Assembly: GCA_001949185.1 (NCBI GenBank)
Contig: BDGG01000002.1
Location: 5,260,448-5,324,447 of the forward strand
Reading direction: 5' to 3'
Source of the DNA: Ramazzottius varieornatus
Taxonomy: Eukaryota; Animalia; Tardigrada
Length of the DNA: 64,000 nucleotides
Within the stretch, counting starts at the first letter, position 1. Each line of letters opens with the position of its first letter. A program made the translations under genes and the position numbers. The notes beneath the pieces were generated by a model. The model ran no database searches. It had not been told where the DNA came from and saw only the letters and a program-made list of their open reading frames with translations. This document shows positions 2,733-50,635 of the stretch, in pieces.

Positions 2733-5485
2733 TCACTCCTTCACGACAGGTCCTCCAACCGTGATCTGCTTCAGCGTACTCGTCAACTGCAAAACAGCAA
2801 AAGGTTGACACACGATCTGACACGTCTAGACAGATCAATTATGGCAACTTACCTCTTCGAACTTCTGAATGTTGCGAACAAAGAAGTCGCCATACCGCGG
2901 TGCAACTTTCGTATCGGCAATGTAAATCATGTTTCCATCAATGTAGAAATCCAACTCTGGTCTGCACTCCAATCTTCCTTCCAACGGCGACCCATGAGTA
3001 TGTACCATGTTCGTCATCTTATGCTGGAACCAGAAAACCTTGCAGATATCATACGGTATAAGAATATGGAGCAAGGCGAAAGTAAATCGACATACCTTGT
3101 AAGTATACAGATGCTGAAGCAGAATATCTTCAGCCATCTCCAAAAAGTTGGCCAGCTTGGGTACTGGCATGGAGGTATACAGCTTCAGGTAACTACAAGT
3201 ATGATATTCGAATAATTCAACAGTAACGACAGCCGTTGAAACTTGGACAGGTTCGGACCGAAAATTACCTCTGGATGGTGGACATCATATTCTGAGCTAC
3301 ATACTCTTGCTTGAGGATGCTCAGCTGATAGTTTTGGAACTCCTACAAGACAGTTGATTATTGGTACAAATGATTTCTTTTATTCTCGCAAAAGTCGGTC
3401 CGGCATACTTTGAAGCTATTCGGTTGAAGATCATCGTAGTTTGTAGCAGGAGTGATGAACTTGGGCATCCCTTGGTTCAACAACTTTTCGAATTCTTCCT
3501 CTTCGTTCCTATTGATAAAACTCATAAAAAATCTGATACTTTGAGCATGACAAAGGGGGAACACCGAAAATTCTGTTCGGAAATTCATTCACGTATATTT
3601 TGCCTTCGACTCACATTTTCTGGATTTTGCTGAAGCGATCGCCCAGTTTGTCTCGCAGGGACGAGCTGATGGATTCGTCAATGTGCATGGGGTGCAGCGT
3701 GAGGCAGACAGCCAAGCAGTTGTACATCTTGTCCTGCGTTTTGGTCAAAGTGTCCACTTGATAGGTTCGACCAACGGTGGCGCTCTGGTCGAAGATGCCA
3801 TTGCCAACTGCCGCGTGGTTCCTCGACACGTTGGTTGTTGCTCTTTGCTGGTACAGAAGCAAATCACAGAACGTCCGAATGGCGTCCTGGTACCGACGCA
3901 TCATCATGTAAGCAACTCCGACATGGTAGTAGGTCGTCACTTGACAAGCCTGCAGTCCGTTTGCTTGGAGATGCTAAGATGTGGAAAAGCAATCCGTGTT
4001 AACAAGAACGCATGTTGGAGTCAATAAGGTTCGTCATAGCTGACATTACCTTCTTTCCCAGTTCGACGTTGTCCAGAGCCTTCAACGCGGTGTGGTAGTC
4101 TCCGAGGAGACAATGAAGTCGCATGAGACTGATGAGGCTATAGTATCCGAGCATCTTGTACATCGGATGGTCGGCGAACGAACCGCTTTCGAAGTTTGGA
4201 TCACCTACGACGTAGAATTTCCGTCTTGAGATATCCACATAAAAGTGTGACTTTCTATTCGGCACGTGGTAGTTGATACTGACCCCCCGAGTTGTGGATC
4301 TTTAGCTGCTCTTGGATTCGGCTTCGTTCCACGAGCTTTAGCCAGATGTTCATCACCACGGTCACATTCCAGATCTGCGAAGTGAGTAAATGCTCGATAA
4401 ATAAAAAACTTTTCGAGCGCAACAAGAAAGCTAACAGGACTCTACCATTTCGTTCTCTTTCAACATTTCCTTTTCTTCTTCGTGCAACTTGTCAGCCTTC
4501 GCTCGATACGTGCAGAACGCAGTGAACTGGTACATGAACTCGTCGATTATGTCCCACACCCATTCGTTAGGCAGCCCAATGTCCAACGGCGTGTCGCGAT
4601 CTGGGAAAAGAACTGTACTTACAGTCAAAGGTCTTCAGATCGTCAAGTGCACCAACTCGTACTAAGCTCAGGTACTTACTCAAGATCAGATCGAAGATCT
4701 GCCAATAGTTCTGGTAAGACTCAAATCGCTGGTCGATCGACAGACTATCGCGCTGAAGGACCAAAAGATTAGTGTAAAATCACAACCAGGTGCTACTCCG
4801 ACACTCGCAATTATAGAAGGAAACTCTTACCGAGCTCTCGTAGATGTGTCTGTAGTACAGTTCCTTGTACAGCAACGTGAATACCCCTTCTACAAGAATA
4901 CATAATGATCAGCCTAACGAATATTCTTCATCGCTTGGACAAAAAGTAGGAGCAATGCTTACCAGGTAAGTCGTCGATTTGACTCTCGACAATCTTCGGG
5001 TGCGGCCAAGCGCGCTGTTGATAATAGTTCTCACTCCACTCTCGGAATCTATATAAGCCAGCATTTTCACCATGCATGTCCGATATCCGCAAAAATTAAC
5101 TAATGAGTAGTTCTTACCCAGCTTCGTACAGATGCTGCATTCGAACAGTATCATGGTCCTTGATAGCCTTCTTGAGGTCTTGCAAGTATTCAATGACTTC
5201 CGGTGGGATGTCGGAGTCGTCATTAGCTCCTAATGGTTCTCGTTCTTGCCAGTGTTGGTGTTGCTGCTCTCTGTAACCTTGCTGTCTACGTCCACCTCCA
5301 CCGTCTCCTCCATACCCTCGATCTTGTCCGTAACCCCGATCTTGTCCATATCCTCGATCTCTCCCATAGCCCCCACCGCCGTAGCTGCCGCCATATCCTC
5401 CTTCGTCATGGAACCTTCCACGGTTATCGTCATTGTTGTAATTGTTATATCCGCGCCGGCCACCGGTGGCAGCTGAGTAGGACAT
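2733..5485 (-). CDS. EIF3L: Eukaryotic translation initiation factor 3 subunit L (multi-exon)
   Basis: Motifs IPPEVIEYL, LPNEWVWDIIDEFMYQF, YKMLGYYSLISLMRLHCLLGDY, TTYYHVGVAYMMMRRYQDAIRTF and LDFYIDGNMIYIADTKVAPRYGDFF; last exon LTSTLKQITVGGPVVKE*. Confidence 0.95.
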
Positions 5486-40609: not shown

Positions 40610-41050
40610 TATTATATCATGTCGTTAAGTTACAGCTTCAGTACTCTGGCTTGCTATGCTTTGCCTTCGCAGCACTTTACCGTCGAAATGTCTTCAAGGG
40701 TTTGCGAACTATGCCTTCAACGTGTCTTCGCTGCATATTGACTAGAACTAGCTCAACCAAATACCACACCACCGAACACCGTACCCGCACATCGCTACTT
40801 GATTATTTGATTTCCTTTTTTTCGCACGGTAACCGCTGACTGGGCGACATACCGTGAGATTTCACGAATTTCCCGCTTCTCCGTATCTCTTCGATTCATG
40901 ATTCTTCGAATTTTTGACACCTGCCGTGACCTGCAAAATCAAAAGCCATCTTCATCACAAGTTGCTGCCTGGAACATCCCCTCCCATTGTGCGGACAATC
41001 ACTGTTTGTCGGTTGAGTGGAAACAGCGTGTCGTTCTGTTTTACAGCGCC

Positions 41051-43883
41051 ATGGAGAAGACATCGACGTGCAGTGCCCCTTCACACGGAGGCATCCCTCC
41101 GCCGATCATGACCATCAACCCTGCTCCCAGCACATCAAACAGAAACATGAAGAAGGAGCTGAACGACCACACAGAAATGCGTCTCGAAGATTTCATGAAG
41201 AAATTCAGCATAGGTACGTCTCTAGAGAACCTCCGATTGATGATCACCCAGATCAAGTCGCGCATAATCTCGACCCACACGAAGTTGCGGAAAGAGGTCG
41301 GTAGCTGGTCATAGCTTCGCACTTTCAGTGTCGAATCAGTTCTTTCTCCCGACTGCTTTTGCTGATTACTGGTGCTTGTGTCGCAGGTGACGATGTATGG
41401 GTCATCAGTAAGGGACAGTGGCACGAAGCTAAGATCATTCTGATCGAAACGTACAAGTATCCCGGAGATGAGACGACATCCGTGCCCATCTACAGAATCC
41501 ATTACCCGGGTTGGGGAAAACGGTAAGCAGGCTCCGACATCCATCGGATGCGGCAGAAGGAAGATGTCTGATGCTTTCTCCTCTTCAGGTATGACGAGTG
41601 GATGTACAGCGATTCGCTGATGCTGCAGAACACAGAGAATAACGCCAAGGCCTCGGCCGAAAACGGCGCCTTGATGGAGGCCAGGTATAAACTCTGGGGA
41701 AAAAATTCACGTTTGTTTTCTCCGGATAGACTTATGCATTACGTTGCGTGATGTTTAATTTTGCAGTGGAATCAACGGCCCAGGCAGACAAGACCAGTTC
41801 TTTGCAGATGACGGCGAAAAAAGCCAGTGTGTTTCAAAGCTCCAATCATGTGCCTATCAACGGAGTATCTCCCGCCAGAGGCCGAGGAAAAGGTGAAAGC
41901 AGAGGAGGCGCGACTGCCAAACCTAGGGGTAACTTCAAAAAATTTTACCTCTAGTGCCGAAGCAGTCGAAGTAATGCGCGAGTTCAACCGAACATTTCGG
42001 TAGTGTACCGTGACTCTCGAATGTCTGGAAAATTATTTATGCTGCATGTTCATCCCATTGAATTTTCCATTGAATTTCGCTCACACGATATTTATTTTCA
42101 ATATTTTTCCAGGTACGACGAGCAGTAAACAAGCGAGAATTGATGCAGGACTGTCTGCGGGAGATAATATTGCAACTGCGGGCTGTCAGTCGCCGGAGCC
42201 TCCCAGCATGGCTTCAGCGCTCGAAAGCGAGCCGACCACCTTGACCGACAACGGAAAAGCGCACAGCTTAGAGCCAGCCAGTTCATTTGAGAAGTCGATT
42301 AACCGACTGGAAAACCCATCCAGTATCAAGAAACCGAAAGAGCGAAGAACACTGGTGCGAGGAAAAAGGTGCCAGCCGGTGAGAGCTATTTATTACGGTT
42401 CGAAAACCGCAGTGATGACGGAGAATCCAGCACAGGCTATTACGTATTTGCTTGTTTTTCAATTAGCCATGACCGAAATGCTACCTGTGGGCACCATCGT
42501 TACAGCCGTTCCTGCTGGAAGTCTTGCCGGAACTCCAGGTCAGCAGTTCATGGTCCAAAGCAAGGTGGAGAACGGTAAGATCGTCTCCTTCCTGGTGCCC
42601 GTCCAACAAGTTACCGAGGTGGAAGAAACTGTTCCCGAAGGTTCGTACCGTAGTTTCAAGTAACGGCTGGATTGTAGTTGTTTCTCTGTAACGGGTGTTG
42701 GCATTGCATGAACGGTCTGTACAGGCCGGCGAAGTGGTTACTGTACGAGCCGGCGAAGTGGTTGCTGTACAGGCCGGCGAAGTGGTCACTGTACGGGCCG
42801 TCCGAGTTGTCTGCATACAAGCCAGCGGATTAACGCAGATCCGCGAGATTCTACTGTTATCTGAGATAACTATGTTTGAATGACAAAGTTACGTGATCTG
42901 TTCTATAGGTACAGTGACTATGGATATGCTTGAGCGAGAACACTCACCAACCGAAAAACCACGGAAGATGCCACGGAAGGAGAAGGATGTTCTTACTAAA
43001 ATTCGCCGACAATGGTAAGAGGCTTTTAAGAGACATACGGTTTTGGTTCTTTGCAGATGAGATATCATGAATGTCATGACTTGTATTTTGTTTAGGGTTA
43101 TGGACAACTTCCGGAAGGGAACTTCTGTGACCTGTCAAACAGTGGGATTGGTACATTTTTCGCCAGGTACTGTTTTCAGTATTGCAGATGCATTTCGCAG
43201 TGGAAACTGAGCTGTCCAGTGAGATACGTGGAAGCGTTTTGTGTTGGCTACCTATTGAGGATTGTCGGTTAAATATTTGTAGGTGGTCGGCGAAAAAGAA
43301 ACAGGATCACGGTTCGGGCGTGCTGAAGTCCCTCGGTCTCCTCTTCAAAGAAGTGCATCAGTGTCCTCCTTCCAAATCGAGCGGAAAGAAAAACGCAAGG
43401 GGAGTGGTCGACCGAGACAATTTGAGGAAATGTGTCGACCTTTCTCCTGCTGGTGAAAAAGAATTCCTGAAGTTGTGCGGTCGAGAAGCATTAAACCATC
43501 TACGTAAGCCTCGAACGATGTCGTTCGCACGACGCAAAGTGGCGGACAATGTAGTGGACGAAGACACCGATGTTAAGGCATACTTGAACTCTGAGCTCAG
43601 ATCCGTAACGATCAGAATATAACGATGAGACTGAACGGAAAGTTATCTTTCAGATGAGGCTGAAAAAACAACCAAGCAACCGGAAAAGTCTGCCGATACC
43701 AAGAAGCCTGAAGGAGCCAAGAAGGCTGGTGGGACCAAGAAGAAGTCCTCGGAGGATAAGTCCAAGTCGAGGTCTCTCGCCAAGAAAACCGCCACAACCA
43801 CCGAAGAAACCATCGAGGTACTGAAACAGAAGTTAGCCAAGAGAAACGGGAGTCTTCCGTCGATCGTGCGGTCCGTTACTTAA
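41051..43883 (+). pseudogene. MULE accessory gene: chromo-barrel (Tudor-knot) domain + RFX-like winged helix + Lys-rich tail; one 1-nt frameshift
   Basis: Spliced exons read FSIGDDVWVISKGQWHEAKII...YRIHYPGWGKRYDEWMYSDSLM (MRG15/Tip60/ARID4-type chromo barrel). Later RQWVMDNF...FARWSAKKK...SLGLLFKEVH...GKKN...NLR resembles the RFX DBD. Exon 43096-43166 is 71 nt where 72 is needed. The 3' end is uncertain. Confidence 0.75.
42717..42831 (+). repeat. 24-bp tandem array (CTGTACAGGCCGGCGAAGTGGTTA) in accessory-gene intron 42641-42908
   Basis: Units at 42717, 42741, 42765 and 42789, plus a degenerate fifth. Confidence 0.9.
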
Positions 43884-44179
43884 TGAGTCTCTGAAGAGTT
43901 CACTTTGTTACTTATGCTTTCGGTTTGAAGCCCAGGTTTTGGAAATATCGGTGATTTGGCCGAGTGCATCCGAACTGCTTTCCTACACTTCATCGAGACA
44001 TTCTTTGTGCGCTTTGGTTTCTGGTTCCTCATCTGGTTCTTGGTTTCTCGTGCGTCCGTGGAATGTCTGGACGAATTAGCTTCCCTGTGTGAATAGTGAT
44101 CACCATTCTCGATCGCGATGCTCTTGTCAAAGTTTCGATGTCTCCACGAAATTGGAAGTATGGCACTTTTCGGTGTCCT

Positions 44180-45295
44180 TATAAGCTGGACAAAGCCATG
44201 GTCGCTTACTACCTCGGAAACAGGAAGATCGTCGAAGTCCTACCAGCTTTCAACAAGTCAGCTTTCGCTAAATGTTCGACTTCCGGTAGAGCTGTCTGTT
44301 TCATACAGATCGTCTGCACTTTCAGGTCGTTCAACTTTGCTGGTAAACGGATCGACGAAGCTCTCCGAGAGCACCTCGAAGCCTTCCGCCTACACGGCGA
44401 ATCTCCCCTCATCGCTCACTTCATGGAGCATTTCGCTGCCAACTGGCACACCACCAATCGCATGCCCTTCCGGCACCAAGATTGCGCCTTGCGTTTAGCT
44501 GTCCGCTTCTTGCGTCGTGACGACACAGAGATCCAGCAAGACATCATGCGGTCGCTGAGGCTCCTTCTCGGTCTCCAGCCTCACTTCTTCTACCGCATGT
44601 CTCGTCAAATAGCCAATGCGCTTTACCAGCTCTTTCAGGCCAATGGATCCTCCAGTATCAAGTCAAAGGATGACTGGAAGCTTTTGTGTACTCTGCTGGA
44701 ATGCGCAGGTGCGGGAGTACGCCTGCCGAAGGTAACGCTCAGAGAAGCCATGCCGAAGTCGGAAAGTCAACCTGTCAACGCCGTCCAACCTGACAACGAG
44801 GTAAAAACGTTTCACCAATCTTTTTCGTTCATCTCAACAACTCGGTGTTCCTTTTCCTCTTTACTTAACTTGTAATAATTACTAGATGTAATATTAGTGG
44901 TCTTTCAAGCACATGCATACACGAAACTGAGCATGCGCTATTGTGAGAACGTATGCAGTTCTATGCGTTGACTTTTCTATTATTGATTTTTGTCTAGTTT
45001 CCAGGTTGATAGAGGTATACATCGGACAGCGAGCTCCACGAAATCCATGGTAGTCCCACGGGTAGCAATACCTGGTCGATGGTCGGTAGGGAAGGTGAAG
45101 TGGTGGAGACGGCAGGGAACCCGGAAGGAAACTTGTTGTCCATACCGGTGGATATCATCCATCACGATACGGACGCTTTCTGTTTGGCCATTGACTCGGT
45201 ACACTTTCTCACCCGAGAGACCGGCCAAGTTACGGTGGACAACGCTTTTGCATTGTCTGTGCGTCTTTGTGGAAGCCAGCATGAACAGTTTAGTC
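44180..45295 (+). pseudogene. GBF1: Captured fragment of the Arf-GEF GBF1 (partial Sec7 fused to HDS region), with introns and frameshifts
   Basis: LDKAMV...RIDEALREHLEAFRLHGESPLI (Sec7) joined directly to LRLAVRFLRR...DDWKLLCTLLECAGAG, then frameshifted DRG(Y)TSDSE, HDTDAF...FLTRE and VFVEASMN. Confidence 0.88.
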
Positions 45296-46064
45296 GGTGT
45301 TTAGTCGGCTTTCACAGTCTTTTTTTCTACTCCTGTGTAAAGTACGATTACTCTAATGACAGGGTATCTGAAAATCTTCCGGAGGAATCCCAAAAGAAGA
45401 AAAGTAGCTTAGATGTACCCTTGCGGAGGAATTCAATACGAAAGAGCTGACAGATTCACAAGAACATTGCAGACGGCAGACAATCTCAAAATCGCTGGTG
45501 CACACAGCTCTGCCGGCTCACATTTGCAACTTCGCCGGGTTGTACGGTACCAAAACCAAAAACAGAAAGCTTGACACCAAATTACCTTCAGGTTGAACAA
45601 CGTTCAAACTGTACGGGCATTGTGTTGTAGAGCAACATAGTACCGTTATCGCCAGAGCTGCTTGAAGTAAGTTAAATAGAATTAAATTACGTATCCTGAA
45701 CGGAAACTTTGAATTACATTTCGCTAGCATCCGTCAAACTTCCTAGGCTTTTGCTCACCACAACATCCTTCGAGGAGTCAAACTTTGGATGTCGAGTCTT
45801 TACACAGCGATTGTTCATGCGATAGAGACGCATTCGAGGTAACGCAATAACACCGTCGCCACCATTCTCGAAATCTTGCTCTGTGTGAGTGACGAGTATG
45901 TCGAAATTCGCAGGTCTTTCGGCAAACAAAGTTCGGCACCCGGGGCATTGGTAACCCATACGAGGATTTGGATATTTCTTGACGACAAACTTATGGGTAC
46001 CGCCATGGTTTGCCTAAACGAAACAAGTATGTTATCCCAGACATGGTAGTCTAAATTCATGCAT

Positions 46065-46135
46065 GGTCACTACGCCGGCGTGTACATCAGTAGGGACAAC
46101 TACGCCAGCGTCTCCTTTGCTAACACTGACGGCAT
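46065..46135 (-). repeat. GCCGGC-motif array (probable transposase intron)
   Basis: Cores at 46074, 46104 and 46128. Confidence 0.6.
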
Positions 46136-46777
46136 CTATGGAGGTTTACCAATTTTGCAACCCTCGCCCTTGTAACAATATCCTTCTTCGTCGAAGTTCA
46201 TTTCGACAGGTTCCTTGTCTTCACGGGTTGTGTAACCGGATCCGCTCAGATTCTTCATCTTTCGCCCAACCTTGTGACCACCAACACTTCGCACGAGCCA
46301 GCTGCCGAAGGGACGCAAATTCTTCTCTAATTTCAGCCATTCCACCATCTGCGCCAAGTTTCCGGACGCCGCGGTCACGGCAATGATATGTTTGCAAGCT
46401 GGGTCTTTATTCTGAGTGAACTGCAAACAACCGCATTTACCTTCCCCGGAAGTAGTGCGGATCTCGACGAAGTACCAGCAGGGCTTCTTCTTGTCTGTAG
46501 ACCGAACTTTCCGAACGACCGAGGAGTTCCATTTTCGTTTATACTGGGTCGTTTCTTCCGCGGAAAGCTTAACCATCCAGCCTTCGTCAGCAGGGCCGTC
46601 CATAAGCTCCACGGCCTTGTCCCAGCTGGCGCGAAACATGTCGGGAAGTCGGTGGTGGCAAAGTCCGTCAGCACATTGGGCGGTCTTGTTCCATCTCCCG
46701 ACAATTCGACCTACAAACATAATGTCACAGTTACAGACTAGCACTATGTACCTGTTCTACTATTAGACGAACCAACA

Positions 46778-46905
46778 AGACTTCACCGGCACAAAGCGCG
46801 GCAGCTCTGCTCGCGTAGGCTTTGGCAACTCCGACGGCGGACAATGCAGCATCTTCGCCAACAAAACGTAACACCACCGGCCTACTTGCAACAACTCCGC
46901 TGGTA
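46778..46905 (-). repeat. 24-bp-period GCCGGC-motif array (probable transposase intron)
   Basis: Cores at 46785, 46809, 46833, 46857, 46876 and 46899. Confidence 0.7.
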
Positions 46906-47919
46906 CTTACTTTTCGACTCGATGCAACGACAACCACGGTGTTCACGTTGCACTTGGGAAACAACCGTTGCACTTTGGACATTATGTGGCTATTGTCGTG
47001 TGCTTTTTCTCGCGACAGGAGAAGGTCTTCTCTGTACTGCTCGGCTATTCTGTATCGGCCTTGATCTTTCAGGGCCTGGAACATGAACACAGTTTCATCG
47101 GCGTACATCTTGAGCAACCTCTCAACCACTTCCCGGGGATCGTTGTGCGTGCCAAAAAAGGCTTTGAGCGTTTTGTTCATGGCCTCGGACAGATTAGTAT
47201 TAGGAAGGTCGCGCGAGAAACCCATCTTTTCACATGCCGGTAGGATTAGTTTCTCGACAAAGTTCTTCTGATGGTGTTTCTCAAACTAGTGCTGGAATTT
47301 GTCATCGCCCAAAGAGCTCTTCATCTCTTTCCACTTCTGGAGATACTGCTCTTCCGAAACTGAATCTACCAGCCCTAGAACATGCTTCCTCACACCAGCT
47401 ACGTTGCGGTGGTACCCCAGTACACAGTTCAGCACGAACGACACATGCGAAGAGGGTACGGGCTTTCCGAGGAAGTATCTCTTGATACCATCTCGGATGA
47501 GTAGAACGCAGAGCGTATGGTTGTGTCGAGGGAAAGCTTCGCGGAATGCGTCGTACAGTGCTCGCTCGCCATCGGTGATGAAATCGAAGCGGAAGTCTTT
47601 TGACATCACATCGACACCTGCATTCACGAGACATTCTCGGAGGTAATTAGCGAACACCGACAACGAAGCTTTCGTCTTCCTCTGAGTTAGGCATGTTGGT
47701 CCGATCAGCAGAGCAGGCTTTCCTGCCTTCTCGTTCACAAGATAAGGATGTTTGATGACTATGACCACCAGATACATGTTGCACAGCTGGAAAGTCAAAC
47801 CGATCTGCAAGCGAAGCTTCACTGCAAACAGAAAACCAAAGGATTAATACCCCATTCAGATGCGCATCACTACAAGACGAAAATCAGCTCAGTCTACAGT
47901 GCCTGTTGATAAGGCGACC

Positions 47920-48080
47920 GACAATGTTACCGGCTCGTACTTCAAGAATTCCGTCATATGTACACTGACAACTCTACCGGCCTATGAACGAACTAATCCA
48001 GTGGCATGTAGATTACCAAAACTGCCGGTGTTTACAGCGGAAACATCGCTGGCGTGTACTTTGTCAACATCGCCGGAATA
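47920..48080 (-). repeat. 24-bp-period GCCGGC-motif array in transposase intron 47822-48109
   Basis: Cores at 47929, 47953, 47976, 48000, 48024, 48048 and 48072. Confidence 0.8.
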
Positions 48081-48944
48081 GGCAATTGCTTTGACCTTAA
48101 TCGACTTACACTTTAGCTTTTGGTCGCCGTTCGTCGCTATCAGTCCAACGTGGTACGGATCTACCACGACGAAATTCTCAGACTTCGATCCATCCTCGTT
48201 CTGGTACTGACGAAGAATGACCCCTTCCTTCCTTCGCAGGTAGCTTTCCACGTCTTCTCCGTATGTGTTCTTGTTGACCGTGTTTCTGATGGTCATGACC
48301 TGTCGCATATCTTTCGTTCCATAATATGGGTTCACCTCGCGGTCGATTTCGGGTATAGTTGACGCAACTTCGAGCACGATGTCTCTAGGGCTCATGGGCT
48401 TGCCGCGTGCAACAGGTGACGCTAGCTTCTTGATCGCGCTTGTGATAGCGCGGTTGGTGTAGGTTTTCCCAGGCGGGAATGGTGCGATCTTGCTTTCGTC
48501 GGCCCATACATACTGGATCACGAAGAAATTCTCGACTGGCTTGCTGCAGCTCTCTGACGACACAGTTGCAAGAAGACGCCGCTTGAAGCCATTGGGCTTC
48601 CCATTAGGTCAACTGTACCAGTCCTTCTTCATGAATAAGAACGGCGTCTGGTCGTCATCAGGCTTGCTACCACTACCAAGCCGTTCATTTGATTCTCACC
48701 ATCTGCCGTTCCCGTCGTCCAGAATTAGTCCGTAGATCCGTTCTCTTTGCTCGGGCCGGAAGGAAACGGCAAACCACGCTTGGCCTTGGAAGCGCTGAGG
48801 TATTCGGTGATATCTGTACGCATCAAGGACTTCTGGATTACACAGCCAGGCGAGAACTGACGCATCGCTTTCCACCGTTTGGAAACAACGACAAAGATTA
48901 TTTCTGCAGAAAGCAATATGATGTGAGTTGGATTTCACTACGTT

Positions 48945-49036
48945 GACAACTCCGTCGGCGTGCACACCAGCATCCTCATCGGCTTATACAACGGCATCTT
49001 CACCGGTTTATACAGTAAAAACTCTGCCGGCATGTA
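48945..49036 (-). repeat. 24-bp-period GCCGGC-motif array in transposase intron 48904-49060
   Basis: Cores at 48954, 48978, 49002 and 49026. Confidence 0.8.
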
Positions 49037-49539
49037 TTGAAAAGAAGCAGCTTGACTCACATCTCATAACATGGTCCCAGAGCGCTGTCCGCCACGGGAG
49101 CTCCTAAGGCAAGATTTCCACGTTCAGAAAATGTAACCACTGGCTGAGATTATCGTTTTGGCTCATGGTCTGATACAGAGAACGACGTCTCCCTGCAACA
49201 GGTAAGTGGTCTCGTTATCGCTGGAGTCACTTGTGCGCTGCTCATAATCCCGACTACTTACGGGGTAATGCACATGTGCACTGGCTCATTAGCGCTGCTC
49301 TGCGTGGAGGCGCCGGTGATAGCTGATGCGTCGTCGTCGTCGTCGTCACTTTCCAACATATATACAACCGACCTATCAGCATTCTTCACCGAAGAGTCTT
49401 TGAAGTTTGCAAAGTTCCTGAAATAACCAATCGATATATTGCTTGCAATGAATATTGCATTTGTGGACTACATAGTGCAAATAAACCACAGAAACACCGT
49501 ACATATCGTCATCTCAATCGGCGAGTACGGCATGTACAC

Positions 49540-49720
49540 GGATTTCGCCGGCGTGAGGAGTAACGTCTACGCCGGCGTGTGGTCTGCCGTCTTCACCGGC
49601 GCTCAATGACAACTGAGACGATATGATACGGACTTCGCCGGCTTGTGCAGTGGCATCTCCGCCGGCGTGTAAAGTGATAACTTCGACGGCTTATGCGAAG
49701 ACAACTTCGCCGGCGTGAAC
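49540..49720 (-). repeat. 24-bp-period GCCGGC-motif array in transposase intron 49418-49781
   Basis: Cores at 49547, 49571, 49595, 49637, 49661, 49685 and 49709 (CTTCGCCGGCGTG on + strand). Confidence 0.88.
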
Positions 49721-50635
49721 ATTTGCAGGTCCAGTAGTTTATAAGTGTTTTTGAGATACGTTGGAAAGTTTGAAAACGTACCTTCCAACTCCAGAAGAGG
49801 TGCTCGGAATATTAGGATCGTCGTCGAGGATGACAGAATTCATAATCAGTTCGTCCGACTCGTCTTGGTTGTCCCATTCCGCGTCGAAAGCGCTTGTAGA
49901 ACGATCGGGGAGTATATCTTGACTGATGTCCTCAGTTTTCAGGCGTTTGACACCCCCACTGCAGCCACTGCTGTTGGGCGAACCAGATGGGAAGATACCA
50001 TCGAACACTATCTCGTTGTCGTTATCCTCATCTGAAATATGCGATGAGTGTTCCATGGCGAGGTGGCAGCGAAAGTCAAAACAGATCCAGGAAGAAAGCG
50101 AGGAGAAAGGCGGAAACAAGTGAAAAATAATTTTTCTTGCGTTGCAAACCCAAGCAACTGGCTTGGCCGTGGCCGCTATTTCGGCTGCGGCGTTTCGGTA
50201 TGCTGAGCGTATATCGTTGTGAGGGGTACGAGTTACGGTGCGGTGTTACGATTATTTTTCGAAATTAAAGTGCAGTACGGTACGAGTTTAGTAGTTGTCT
50301 GGATACGCTGAAGGTTATACTGAAGGCAAAATTCGCAAACCCCCGAAGACATTTTGACGGTAAAGTGCTGCGAAGGCAAAGCATAGCAAGCCCAGAACTC
50401 TATCCTACAGTGCCACTGTTTTTCAATCGTTTGCAAAGCTGCGAACAAGAGGAAACTATAAACTGTAATTTTTTGACGTTTCGCATGCTTCCGAGTTGCG
50501 CAGTTTGCACACGGAAGTCCTGTCACATCCCAGTGACCGTCCGGCCAAGTAAGCCCTTTTGCTATTAGGGCTATGTTATTGGAGTTTATGTTCAGCTTAT
50601 GTTCGATTGCTCTTAGATGGACTGAAGGTGGATAG

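What the first reader, a model, noticed from the sequence alone, without database searches (positions are those of the whole stretch)
40648..50392. Two-gene animal Mutator element with a MuDR/VANDAL-like layout: candidate self-encoded chromatin-targeting or anti-silencing system
Seen in sequence: 72-bp TIRs (67/72 identical), a 9-bp TSD with one mismatch, and two convergent spliced genes each starting about 340-400 bp inside a TIR. These are a MULE transposase (-) and a chromo-barrel + winged-helix gene (+). The same 24-bp-period motif fills introns of both genes. Established knowledge: maize MuDR has convergent mudrA/mudrB driven from its TIRs, and Arabidopsis VANDAL MULEs encode VANC proteins that bind tandem short motifs in non-coding parts of their own family and counteract silencing. 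Inference: this could be an independently evolved animal analogue, in which an element-encoded protein reads a histone mark and binds the element's own motif arrays. I do not know of this combination in an animal MULE, but cannot confirm novelty without searches.
Basis: partly seen in the sequence, partly recalled or inferred. Interest (0 to 1): 0.92.

Follow-up and report, generated by a model that had tools for sequence, protein, structure and literature searches.

The report
Tardigrade Mutator transposon carrying chromatin-reader gene
This is a dead copy of a Mutator-type "jumping gene" in the tardigrade Ramazzottius varieornatus whose family, unusually for an animal transposon, has kept under selection a second gene built from the histone-mark-reading front end of a host chromatin protein, alongside family-specific arrays of a short DNA motif.

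Summary
The observation largely holds. There are 72-nt TIRs, a 9-bp TSD (8/9), a MULE/SWIM transposase on the minus strand, a convergent spliced chromo-barrel gene on the plus strand, and six arrays of a 24-bp-period motif with a GCCGGCGA core. The winged helix is not supported: no RFX hit, and parts of the frames read in that region are copy-specific frameshift or intron read-through.

The window copy is dead. It has five deletions in the accessory gene, and a stop plus two conserved-motif changes in the transposase. It also carries captured host fragments, one from a GBF1-like gene and one from a second host gene.

All seven family-A copies, a sister family B (transposase about 60% identical) and more distant families carry the same convergent chromo-barrel gene. 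dN/dS is 0.13-0.20, as low as for the transposase. The C-terminal tail is identical in A and B, with only synonymous differences. 17 of 19 genome-wide tandem motif pairs lie in these elements.

The 5' half, introns included, is homologous to host gene RvY_18288 (chromo barrel plus MRG). The direction and number of exchanges are unresolved. Function is inferred, not shown. Other first-reader notes of this scan flagged similar elements elsewhere in this genome.

The parts
40639..40647 (.). left target-site duplication (CAGTACTCT)
   Evidence: matches 50393-50401 at 8/9
40648..40719 (+). left terminal inverted repeat, 72 nt
   Evidence: 93% complementary to the right arm. The first ~21 nt are 19/21 identical to the family B terminus
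40915..42284 (+). block homologous, introns included, to host gene RvY_18288 (5' UTR exon to mid exon 5)
   Evidence: blastn 77.6% over 1294 nt for 41037-42284; alignments; exons 13.7% and introns 28.6% divergent
41051..43894 (+). Accessory gene. Ancestral exon model: E1 41051-41213, E2 41387-41522, E3 41589-41684 (E2+E3 = chromo barrel), E4 41767-41926, E5 42112-42378, E6 42469-42640, E7 42909-43014, E8 43096-43166, E9 43283-43604, E10 43654-43894. In this copy it is broken by a 23-bp deletion in E4 (after 41773), 1-bp deletions in E5 (~42330), E8 (~43118) and at the start of E10 (~43657), and a 112-bp deletion in E10 (43838/43839).
   Evidence: Exon junctions E1-E5 follow the host protein P0005; E6-E8 follow the annotated fragment P0002. 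Lesions come from comparison with the other copies, the host and family B. Tudor-knot hit. No RNA evidence was obtainable.
42480..42611 (+). fragment of a second host gene (contig C1, about 301.9 kb) forming most of E6
   Evidence: 84% nt over 132 bp; 72% aa; conserved relatives P0003/P0004 in other samples
42718..42811 (+). array of 4 units of the 24-bp motif, in the intron between E6 and E7
44180..45391 (+). three collinear fragments of a host GBF1-like (Sec7) gene, with internal deletions (44180-44490, 44492-45300, 45311-45391)
   Evidence: Pfam Sec7 E=1e-16; parent at C2:7338813-7343254, 81-89% nt; most of it is absent from the other copies
45716..50056 (-). MULE transposase gene. First exon 50056-49782, catalytic-core exon about 47822-46915, SWIM exon about 46711-46137, probable last exon about 46013-45716. 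In this copy there is a TAG stop at about 47287 where other copies have Trp, Gly in place of the first conserved Asp (IGLTF vs IDLTF), and Leu in place of the His of the CxxH motif.
   Evidence: annotated as two separate proteins, RvY_05206 and RvY_05205
45525..45546 (-). single 24-bp motif unit downstream of the probable last transposase exon
46065..46116 (-). motif array (2 units) in the intron before the probable last transposase exon
   Evidence: an array at the equivalent place in family B (L055 4174-4340)
47920..48084 (-). degenerate motif array (4 units) in a transposase intron
48945..49038 (-). motif array (3 units) in a transposase intron
49542..49721 (-). motif array (5-7 units) in the first transposase intron
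50321..50392 (-). right terminal inverted repeat
50393..50401 (.). right target-site duplication (CAGAACTCT)

Best explanation
The interval is the longest of seven copies of a Mutator-like DNA transposon (family A) of Ramazzottius varieornatus. This copy is inactivated.

The family belongs to a clade of tardigrade MULEs that carry, convergent with the transposase, a second protein-coding gene maintained by selection. That gene encodes an N-terminal chromo barrel of the Eaf3/MRG15/MSL3 type without the MRG effector domain. The barrel is followed by an RG-rich and variable linker, a short conserved motif (LSPxGxxxFLxL), a lysine-rich/coiled-coil region and an invariant C-terminal tail. The reader module is homologous, at the DNA level and with introns, to the 5' part of the host chromo-barrel plus MRG gene RvY_18288. 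So the element lineage and this host gene have exchanged it. Family A has also picked up at least two further host gene fragments by the same kind of transduplication.

Most likely mechanism (inferred, about 40%): the truncated reader binds a methyl-lysine histone mark and acts together with the transposase as an integration or targeting cofactor. This is functionally comparable to what is reported for MURB of MuDR, and to tethering factors of retroelements.

Next most likely (about 25%): it acts as a decoy that occupies the mark without recruiting the host MRG complexes, protecting element chromatin.

The 24-bp-period GCCGGCGA arrays are a conserved cis feature of the same clade. They are probably binding sites for an element-encoded protein; which protein is unknown.
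For: SHOWN.
- MULE identity: TIRs, 9-bp TSDs on 7/7 copies, MULE and SWIM signatures.
- Organism and gene names.
- Accessory gene in all A copies as far as their internal deletions allow.
- Family B elements (L055 554-8097 with a perfect 9-bp TSD; L059, L056, L058) have the same layout: E1-E4 at about 69% nt, E9 at 31% aa (E=1e-6), E10 at 70% aa, and the tail RESSVDRAVRYLMSL identical with 11/48 nt differences, none changing a residue.
- Further loci with the chromo-barrel exon at 63-78% identity. Three of them have a MULE transposase match on the facing strand: C5 at 1.65 Mb, C19 and C50.
- Other chromo barrels of the genome are only 35-37% identical.
- Selection on E1-E3: dN/dS 0.20 between the young and old A subfamilies (binomial p=3e-5; nonsynonymous divergence 0.05 against intron divergence 0.15, Fisher p=7e-4) and 0.13 between A and B. 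The transposase core over the same young-old interval gives 0.24-0.33. Within-subfamily comparisons give 0.5-0.9, as expected for copies decaying after insertion.
- RvY_18288 = chromo barrel (Tudor-knot 32 bits; best PDB matches Eaf3, MRG701, MSL3) plus MRG domain (ESM Atlas features 0.93, 20 of 30 hits MRG; structure TM 0.67 to MORF4L1/2).
- Arrays: core density 2.8/kb inside against 0.46/kb outside the element. The same core and period occur in family B. 19 exact tandem pairs genome-wide against 0 for the control pattern, 17 of them in A, B or B-like elements.

FROM THE SEQUENCE, WITH MY OWN KNOWLEDGE OF MRG15/MSL3: the aromatic positions of the methyl-lysine cage (W/Y ... HY.GW ... DEW) are retained in the A, B and host sequences.
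Against: - No copy with both genes intact was found. The window copy has five lesions in the accessory gene and three in the transposase. L019, L020 and the family B copies examined (L055, L056, L058, L059) are also broken, and the old A subfamily transposed with two shared stop codons in the chromo barrel. So the protein is not needed in cis, and the system may be extinct in this assembly.
- No RNA evidence could be obtained.
- No DNA-binding domain was found in the accessory protein, and nothing ties it to the arrays or to the transposase.
- Synonymous divergence between A and B is lower for the chromo-barrel exons (pS 0.60) than for the transposase (pS 0.83). The host gene also sits closer to A (introns 0.29) than to B (0.41) or to the distant family (63-65% aa). 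So the low dN/dS could be partly inflated by repeated conversion from a selected host gene. The invariant tail and E9/E10, which have no host counterpart, argue against that as the whole explanation.
- Exon models for E7-E10 rest on frame continuity and on comparison of two to six sequences only.
Confidence: 0.6

Rival explanations
1. One reading: a VANC- or TnpA-like self-recognition system. The accessory protein reads a histone mark with its chromo barrel, binds the element's own 24-bp motif arrays through a DNA-binding domain, and counteracts silencing of its own family.
For: The arrays are real, specific to this MULE clade, and conserved in core and period between families whose introns are otherwise unalignable. 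The flanks of the core differ between A (..GCCGGCGAAGT..) and B (..GCCGGCGAGCTC..), as would be expected for co-evolving targets. The accessory gene co-occurs with them and is under selection. VANC proteins bind short motifs that form tandem repeats in non-coding parts of VANDAL elements (PMC5735166).
Against: No winged helix or other DNA-binding domain was detected. The frames in that region of the window are partly frameshift products. E7-E9 are the least conserved part of the protein (31% aa). Array orientation relative to the accessory gene is reversed in family B. The transposase N-terminal region is at least as good a candidate for binding the arrays. From memory only, not checked here: tardigrades are reported to lack DNMT1/3-type cytosine methylation, so the VANC effector logic would not carry over.
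Confidence: 0.17
2. Pack-MULE-style junk: the second 'gene' is merely a chimera of transduplicated host fragments that hitch-hikes near the left end, with no function for the element.
For: The 5' half is a DNA-level copy of host RvY_18288 with its introns. E6 is a piece of another host gene. A GBF1-like fragment lies just downstream. Every present-day copy is broken. Regions near the ends tend to survive internal deletions.
Against: The same multi-exon architecture is kept in families whose transposases are only about 60% (B) and about 40% (distant family) identical. dN/dS is 0.13-0.20 with strong statistical support, and nonsynonymous sites are three times more conserved than the adjacent introns. 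The 15-residue tail is identical despite 11 synonymous changes.
Confidence: 0.1
3. Reverse direction: the chromo-barrel module is ancestral to the MULE clade, and the host gene RvY_18288 acquired its promoter-proximal part and exons 1-5a from a family-A-like element, by domestication or by conversion of an older MRG-family gene by element copies.
For: The host module is much closer to A than to B or the distant family: introns 0.29 against 0.41, exon 2 at 82-88% against 63-65% aa. It therefore appears nested among element copies rather than outside them. No full-length homologue of RvY_18288 was found in 5.8 billion proteins, as expected of a young or fast-evolving chimera. Homology covers the 5' UTR exon and its small intron in A, B and host alike.
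Against: Chromo barrel plus MRG is the canonical, ancient architecture of the Eaf3/MRG15/MSL3 family. It is more simply explained if RvY_18288 is the original donor and elements re-copied it by homology-guided gap repair. No TIR or transposase remnant flanks RvY_18288, which lies next to a COG5 gene. Three taxa without an outgroup cannot be rooted, and the sequences of the distant families could not be fetched.
Confidence: 0.3
4. The arrays are ordinary intronic minisatellites with no role, which expanded by slippage from one ancestral unit.
For: Units are degenerate and unit number varies between copies (one extra unit in L020). Arrays lie in non-coding sequence only.
Against: The 8-nt core and the 24-bp period persist between A and B, although the surrounding introns are at or near saturation. 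There are several separate arrays per element. 17 of 19 genome-wide tandem pairs lie in these elements, with zero for the control pattern.
Confidence: 0.15

Closest known systems
MuDR of maize (mudrA/mudrB)
   Same: Mutator superfamily, 9-bp TSD, and two convergent genes each starting a few hundred bases inside a TIR. The second gene is not the transposase; for MuDR it is reported to be needed for integration (as summarised in PMC6446971).
   Different: No sequence relation to mudrB was found. Here the second gene has an identifiable chromatin-reader domain and an identifiable host homologue. TIRs are 72-79 nt rather than about 215 nt. The host is an animal.
VANDAL21/Hiun MULEs of Arabidopsis with VANC (PMC5735166, PMC10398659)
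   Same: A MULE with extra gene(s), plus short motifs forming tandem repeats in non-coding parts of the element that differ between related families.
   Different: No homology to VANC, and no DNA-binding domain found in the accessory protein. Binding of the arrays is untested. The effector logic (loss of DNA methylation) is unlikely to carry over to a tardigrade (my recollection, not checked).
Pack-MULEs, KI-MULE and animal Pack-TIRs (PMC8277862); Turmoil-1 of C. elegans (PMC2572040)
   Same: Host gene fragments copied at DNA level, with introns, between MULE TIRs. Several fragments from different genes are fused into one transcription unit.
   Different: These elements also keep a transposase gene, so they are not Pack-MULEs in the strict sense. 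The captured reader module is conserved across families under purifying selection. Tan et al. found no Pack-MULE in 100 animal reference genomes, and coding function of such captures is considered rare.
PIF/Harbinger two-gene transposons (transposase plus Myb-like protein)
   Same: An animal DNA transposon that needs, or at least keeps, a second protein gene besides the transposase, together with repeated short motifs in the element (my own knowledge of the family).
   Different: A different superfamily. The Harbinger second protein is a SANT/Myb DNA binder, whereas here the recognisable domain reads histones, not DNA.
Chromoviruses (Ty3/gypsy integrases with a chromodomain) and other tethered integration systems
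   Same: A mobile element encoding its own methyl-lysine reader of the chromodomain superfamily, thought to steer integration (my own knowledge).
   Different: Here it is a chromo barrel of the MRG/MSL3 type on a separate protein of a cut-and-paste DNA transposon.

Membership tests
Mutator-like elements (MULE superfamily) | terminal inverted repeats | tested here: met
   72 nt, 93%; the same termini on six more copies and, with 19/21 identity, on family B
Mutator-like elements (MULE superfamily) | target-site duplication of 8-11 bp (typically 9) | tested here: met
   9 bp on 7/7 family A copies, all different, five perfect; 9 bp on two family B copies
Mutator-like elements (MULE superfamily) | transposase with MULE DDE domain (PF10551) | tested here: inconclusive
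   Matches at 17-21.5 bits, E 3e-4 to 9e-3, below the 27.6-bit cut-off. Precomputed PF10551 on relatives P0019 and P0024, and UniProt names 'MULE transposase domain-containing' for paralogues. The D..D..E/CxxH pattern is visible in the alignment.
Mutator-like elements (MULE superfamily) | SWIM zinc finger after the core (present in many MULE clades, not all) | tested here: inconclusive
   CxC...CxH is readable in the sequence. Pfam SWIM scores 13 bits, below the 19.6 cut-off. UniProt names the fragment 'SWIM-type domain-containing'.
MuDR-type two-gene MULE | second gene convergent with the transposase gene, inside the TIRs, present across the family | tested here: met
MuDR-type two-gene MULE | second protein homologous to MURB | not tested
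   No MURB sequence or profile was available. No Pfam family matched the C-terminal exons.
VANC-type anti-silencing system | element protein that binds the element's own short tandem motifs | not testable with these tools
   Arrays are present and clade-specific. Binding needs EMSA, ChIP or DAP-seq.
VANC-type anti-silencing system | homology to VANC | tested here: not met
   No Pfam family other than Tudor-knot/MSL3_chromo-like matched any exon or annotated fragment.
Pack-MULE (strict sense) | non-autonomous element without a transposase gene, carrying host fragments | tested here: not met
   Host fragments are present, but the element carries a transposase gene, now broken.
Eaf3/MRG15/MSL3 protein family (for the accessory protein) | N-terminal chromo barrel (Tudor-knot) | tested here: met
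   PF11717 at 20.9 bits against a cut-off of 20.8 on exon 2 alone; 32.3 bits in the host homologue; best PDB matches are Eaf3, MRG701 and MSL3
Eaf3/MRG15/MSL3 protein family (for the accessory protein) | C-terminal MRG domain | tested here: not met
   Residues 260-633 of RvY_18288 match only at the host locus. The MRG domain of the host protein itself is seen only by ESM Atlas features and structure, not by Pfam.
   No hit for any exon or fragment. The genome scan at E<=10 lists nine matches (eight over the cut-off), none in the element or its copies. The joined exons were not searched, by rule.

The most novel reading that the evidence does not exclude
A clade of animal Mutator transposons runs a self-encoded chromatin system: a truncated MSL3/MRG15-type histone reader with an invariant interaction tail, plus cognate 24-bp-phased GCCGGCGA arrays. 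The system steers integration or shields the element's chromatin. It has traded its reader module back and forth with a host MRG-family gene, so that the N-terminus of host RvY_18288 is now of transposon descent. That would be an animal counterpart of MURB/VANC/TnpA-type accessory functions, caught together with a domestication event.
Probability: 0.22. Interest if true: 0.9.

Novelty: new variant of a known kind. Interest (0 to 1): 0.74.

Why it matters
Accessory genes of cut-and-paste transposons are few, mostly from plants, and of obscure origin. In the survey of MULEs across eukaryotes that I read (PMC6446971), the animal clades in the passages shown list one ORF, and no chromo domain or tardigrade is mentioned. 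A scan of 100 animal genomes found no Pack-MULE (PMC8277862).

Here the origin of an accessory gene can be read directly: a host histone-reader module, captured with its introns. Its retention under selection can be measured across several families in a 56-Mb genome.

This makes three questions testable:
- whether DNA transposons use histone readers to choose targets or to escape silencing in animals;
- what the conserved motif arrays bind;
- whether host chromatin genes and transposons exchange modules in both directions.

It is also a warning for annotation. RvY_18288, RvY_05203, RvY_05205 and RvY_05206 are currently named as hypothetical proteins or by domain only.

Tried and rejected
1. 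My first reading was that the accessory gene is a one-off chimera of captured host pieces. I dropped it when family B and further families turned out to carry the same gene under selection.

2. I also supposed the accessory module of A and B to be clearly younger than the transposase split, because one blastn match runs through its introns. I weakened this: the introns are short and 41-45% divergent, near saturation. Only the lower synonymous divergence (0.60 against 0.83) remains unexplained.

3. RFX or winged helix: rejected as above.

4. MRG domain of RvY_18288: not detected by Pfam or by PDB phmmer. The single-sequence AlphaFold model was useless (pLDDT 37), so no fold search was run on it. 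Only ESM Atlas supports the domain.

5. The search for full-length homologues of RvY_18288 and of the family B transposase found only R. varieornatus proteins and one metagenome fragment. The range of the clade outside this species is therefore unknown.

The distant families (C5 at 1.65 Mb, C19, C10, C1 at 6.75 Mb, C20, C50, C103) are known only from search tables, and no rooted tree could be built.

9. Complex prediction was not used, because there was no well-founded pair of domains to test.

10. By rule, the spliced gene models were searched exon by exon by reference.

Full report
**What is at the coordinates**

The inverted-repeat search gives arms at 40648-40719 and 50321-50392, 72 nt long and 93% complementary. 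The nine bases outside them read CAGTACTCT and CAGAACTCT.

The genome (55.8 Mb, 200 contigs) holds six more copies with both ends, 4.5-8.8 kb long. Each is flanked by its own 9-bp duplication, perfect in five of them. Exact look-up of annotated proteins names the organism as Ramazzottius varieornatus.

All shorter copies are internal-deletion derivatives of a window-like structure. Two of them (L021, L022; 87% identical to the window) form an older subfamily that shares one deletion joining 41721 to 46311.

**The transposase (minus strand)**

Translation starts at 50056 and runs through several exons to about 45716. Pfam gives weak MULE and SWIM matches, below its cut-offs. Homologues in the protein database are R. 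varieornatus proteins named MULE- or SWIM-domain-containing, plus one metagenome fragment with PF10551 on record.

In the window the core exon carries:
- a TAG where four other copies have Trp;
- Gly where L020, L021, L022 and all family B copies have the first conserved Asp;
- Leu at the His of the CxxH motif.

The annotators accordingly called two separate proteins, RvY_05206 and RvY_05205. I found no copy with an uninterrupted transposase gene.

**The second gene (plus strand)**

Translation starts at 41051. Exons 2 and 3 encode a chromo barrel. Exon 2 alone reaches the Pfam Tudor-knot cut-off.

Exon junctions E1-E5 could be fixed because the block from about 40915 to 42284 aligns, introns included, with a gene on contig C18 (77.6% over 1294 nt; alignments). 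Its annotated product is RvY_18288 (P0005, 633 aa), which gives the splice pattern. E6-E8 follow the annotated fragment RvY_05203-7. E9, E10 and the stop follow from frame continuity in copy L019 and from family B.

Against the other copies, the host gene and family B, the window copy has:
- a 23-bp deletion in E4;
- single-base deletions in E5, in E8 and at the start of E10;
- a 112-bp deletion in E10.

The long open frame 42010-42663 that a reader sees in the window is the product of the E5 deletion plus a 90-nt intron that happens to stay open. Part of E8 is likewise read out of frame. These artefacts lie where an 'RFX-like winged helix' was reported by a sibling note (s1-813072).

No RFX or other winged-helix family matches any exon or fragment. 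A scan of the whole genome with PF02257 at E<=10 lists nine matches, eight over the family's cut-off, and none in any copy. By rule I searched exons one by one and never a joined protein. A very divergent small DNA-binding fold split over exons therefore cannot be excluded.

**Host fragments**

Three kinds of host-derived sequence are present.
- The ORF at 44096-44875 is a Sec7 domain. It and its neighbours (44180-45391) are three collinear pieces, 81-89% identical, of a GBF1-like gene at C2:7.34 Mb. Most of this is absent from the other copies. This agrees with note s1-813125.
- Most of E6 (42480-42611) is 84% identical to an exon of a gene on contig C1. Its product has conserved relatives in other samples.
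- The largest is the RvY_18288 block.

RvY_18288 has a chromo barrel whose best solved relatives are Eaf3, MRG701 and MSL3. Residues 340-560 resemble MRG domains in ESM Atlas, with feature score 0.93, 20 of 30 hits in MRG clusters, and TM 0.67 to MORF4L1/2 models. Pfam and phmmer do not see this domain, and my single-sequence model was too poor to use.

The gene lies next to a COG5 gene, without flanking inverted repeats or transposase remnants.

**Why this is not a one-off capture**

A search with the transposase found a sister family B (about 60% amino-acid identity, synonymous sites saturated). Two of its copies have 78-79-nt TIRs, termini nearly identical to family A, and 9-bp duplications.

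Family B has the same convergent second gene:
- E1-E4 at about 69% nucleotide identity;
- E9 at 31% amino-acid identity with a conserved LSPxGxxxFLxL motif;
- the lysine-rich E10 at 70%;
- a C-terminal tail, RESSVDRAVRYLMSL, identical to family A although 11 of its 48 nucleotides differ, none changing a residue.

Genome-wide, the chromo-barrel exon recurs at further loci:
- 76-78% identity to the host exon at C20, C50, C103 and C1:6.75 Mb;
- 63-65% at C19, C5:1.647 Mb and C10.

The next best chromo barrels of the genome are only 35-37% identical. At C5, C19 and C50 a MULE transposase match lies on the facing strand a few kilobases away. It is 39-40% identical to the family B protein at C5 and C19, and 58% at C50. 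So gene and transposase co-occur and roughly co-diverge. Two other first-reader notes (s1-809087, s1-794809) describe such elements elsewhere in this genome.

**Selection**

Codons were taken exon by exon in the host frame, and split codons were dropped.

| Comparison | Region | dN/dS | Other values |
|---|---|---|---|
| Young vs old family A subfamilies | E1-E3 | 0.20 | dN 0.05, dS 0.25, intron divergence 0.15; binomial p=3e-5; nonsynonymous vs intron sites, Fisher p=7e-4 |
| Family A vs family B | E1-E3 | 0.13 | binomial p=6e-11 |
| Young vs old family A subfamilies | transposase core | 0.24-0.33 | same interval as row 1 |
| Within subfamilies | E1-E4/E5 (accessory gene) | 0.5-0.9 | as expected for copies decaying after insertion |

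This is the usual signature of a gene that works for the element. The present copies are nevertheless all damaged. The old subfamily transposed with two shared stop codons in the barrel, so the protein, if needed, can act in trans.

**The unresolved history of the reader module**

Intron divergence is 0.29 between family A and the host gene, 0.41 between B and host, and 0.45 between A and B. Synonymous divergence A-B is 0.60 for the module but 0.83 for the transposase. The distant family is far from the host (63-65%).

A single ancient capture followed by independent evolution does not fit these numbers. Two explanations remain:
- elements re-copied the homologous host gene more than once, by homology-guided gap repair, most recently in family A;
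- the host gene received its 5' part from a family-A-like element.

The canonical barrel-plus-MRG architecture of RvY_18288 favours the first. The apparent nesting of the host gene among element copies, and the lack of any full-length homologue in the database, favour the second. I put them at about 0.5 and 0.3. Rooting needs the distant copies, which I could no longer fetch.

**The arrays**

Six arrays lie in the window copy, one on the plus strand in an accessory-gene intron and five on the minus strand in transposase non-coding sequence. The core occurs at 2.8 per kb inside the element and 0.46 per kb outside it.

Family B has arrays of the same 24-bp period and the same GCCGGCGA core, with different flanks. 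One of them lies in the intron before the last transposase exon, as in family A. In B the array inside the accessory gene is antisense to that gene. Orientation therefore follows the element rather than transcription.

Exact tandem pairs of the core number 19 in the genome against 0 for the reversed control pattern. Seventeen lie in A, B or B-like elements.

The arrays are thus a conserved, clade-specific cis feature. What binds them is unknown. The accessory protein has no recognisable DNA-binding domain, and the transposase N-terminal region is an equally good candidate.

**Mechanism (inference)**

- Shown: a selected, element-borne protein with a chromo barrel whose aromatic positions are retained (compared with MRG15/MSL3 from my own knowledge), lacking the MRG domain, and with an invariant tail.
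- Inferred: it binds a methyl-lysine mark.
- Most likely role, about 40%: it serves the transposase as an integration or target-choice cofactor. For comparison, mudrB is described as required for integration (PMC6446971).
- Alternative, about 25%: it competes with host MRG-family complexes at element chromatin.
- Array binding by this protein, about 17%.
- No function, about 10%.

**Comparison with what is known**

The layout is that of MuDR. The arrays recall VANDAL/VANC (PMC5735166). The captures recall Pack-MULEs.

No homology to VANC was found, and none to MURB could be tested. The element keeps a transposase gene, so it is not a Pack-MULE. I found no report of a chromo-barrel accessory gene in a MULE, nor of these tardigrade elements. 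Tan et al. state that no Pack-MULE was identified in 100 animal reference genomes.

I rate it a new variant of a known kind.

**Limits**

There are no transcript data and no context for the metagenome relative. The sequences of the distant families were not available. Exon models E7-E10 rest on few sequences.

Noticed in passing
window 44180-45391 (+); parent at G000 C2:7338813-7343254: Three collinear pieces of a host GBF1-like Sec7 gene (81-89% nt) sit between the 3' ends of the two element genes, keeping a 259-codon open frame. They are present almost only in this copy, so this is a recent transduplication.
   Followed up: partly
L060 3144-6310 (G000 C11:1284144-1287310): A different 3.1-kb element with 48-nt inverted repeats (94%) and no blastn similarity to the MULE contains a tandem pair of the same motif (GCCGGCGAAGT, 13 bases, GCCGGCGAAGT). 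It is one of only two such pairs outside the MULE clade; the other is at C1:9067405.
   Followed up: no
L045 4896-5047 and 7113-7264 (G000 C18:301896-304264): A 152-nt inverted repeat pair (95%) spaced 2.1 kb apart, just downstream of RvY_18288. It is probably another non-autonomous TIR element.
   Followed up: no
L047 4695-5177 (-) (G000 C1, about 301.7-302.2 kb): The host gene that donated E6 encodes a motif (VGTIVTAVP..G..GQQF.VQ.K.ENG....LVPVQ.V) conserved in unnamed proteins from other samples (P0003, P0004). It is followed by a SUMO-interaction-like stretch (IIEPVVDLT). No Pfam family matches. Family B has a similar PPKIIEPLLD stretch in its accessory gene.
   Followed up: partly
window 41398 (codon TGG) and the equivalent position in L019, L021, L022: The same Trp codon of the chromo barrel is TAG in copy L019 (young subfamily) and in both old-subfamily copies. 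This is either a parallel G-to-A change or conversion between copies.
   Followed up: no
L048 about 3640-3700 (G000 C18, about 305.8 kb): A short run of N inside the RvY_18288 locus (seen as X in ORF translations), so one intron or exon edge of the host gene is not fully assembled or is masked.
   Followed up: no
window 40648-40730: The TIR itself contains four spaced copies of a heptamer, TG(C/T)CTTC. The first unit of the array in the first transposase intron ends in the same TGTCTTCGC as the inner TIR copy. This is a possible link between TIR sites and arrays, seen in one unit only.
   Followed up: no
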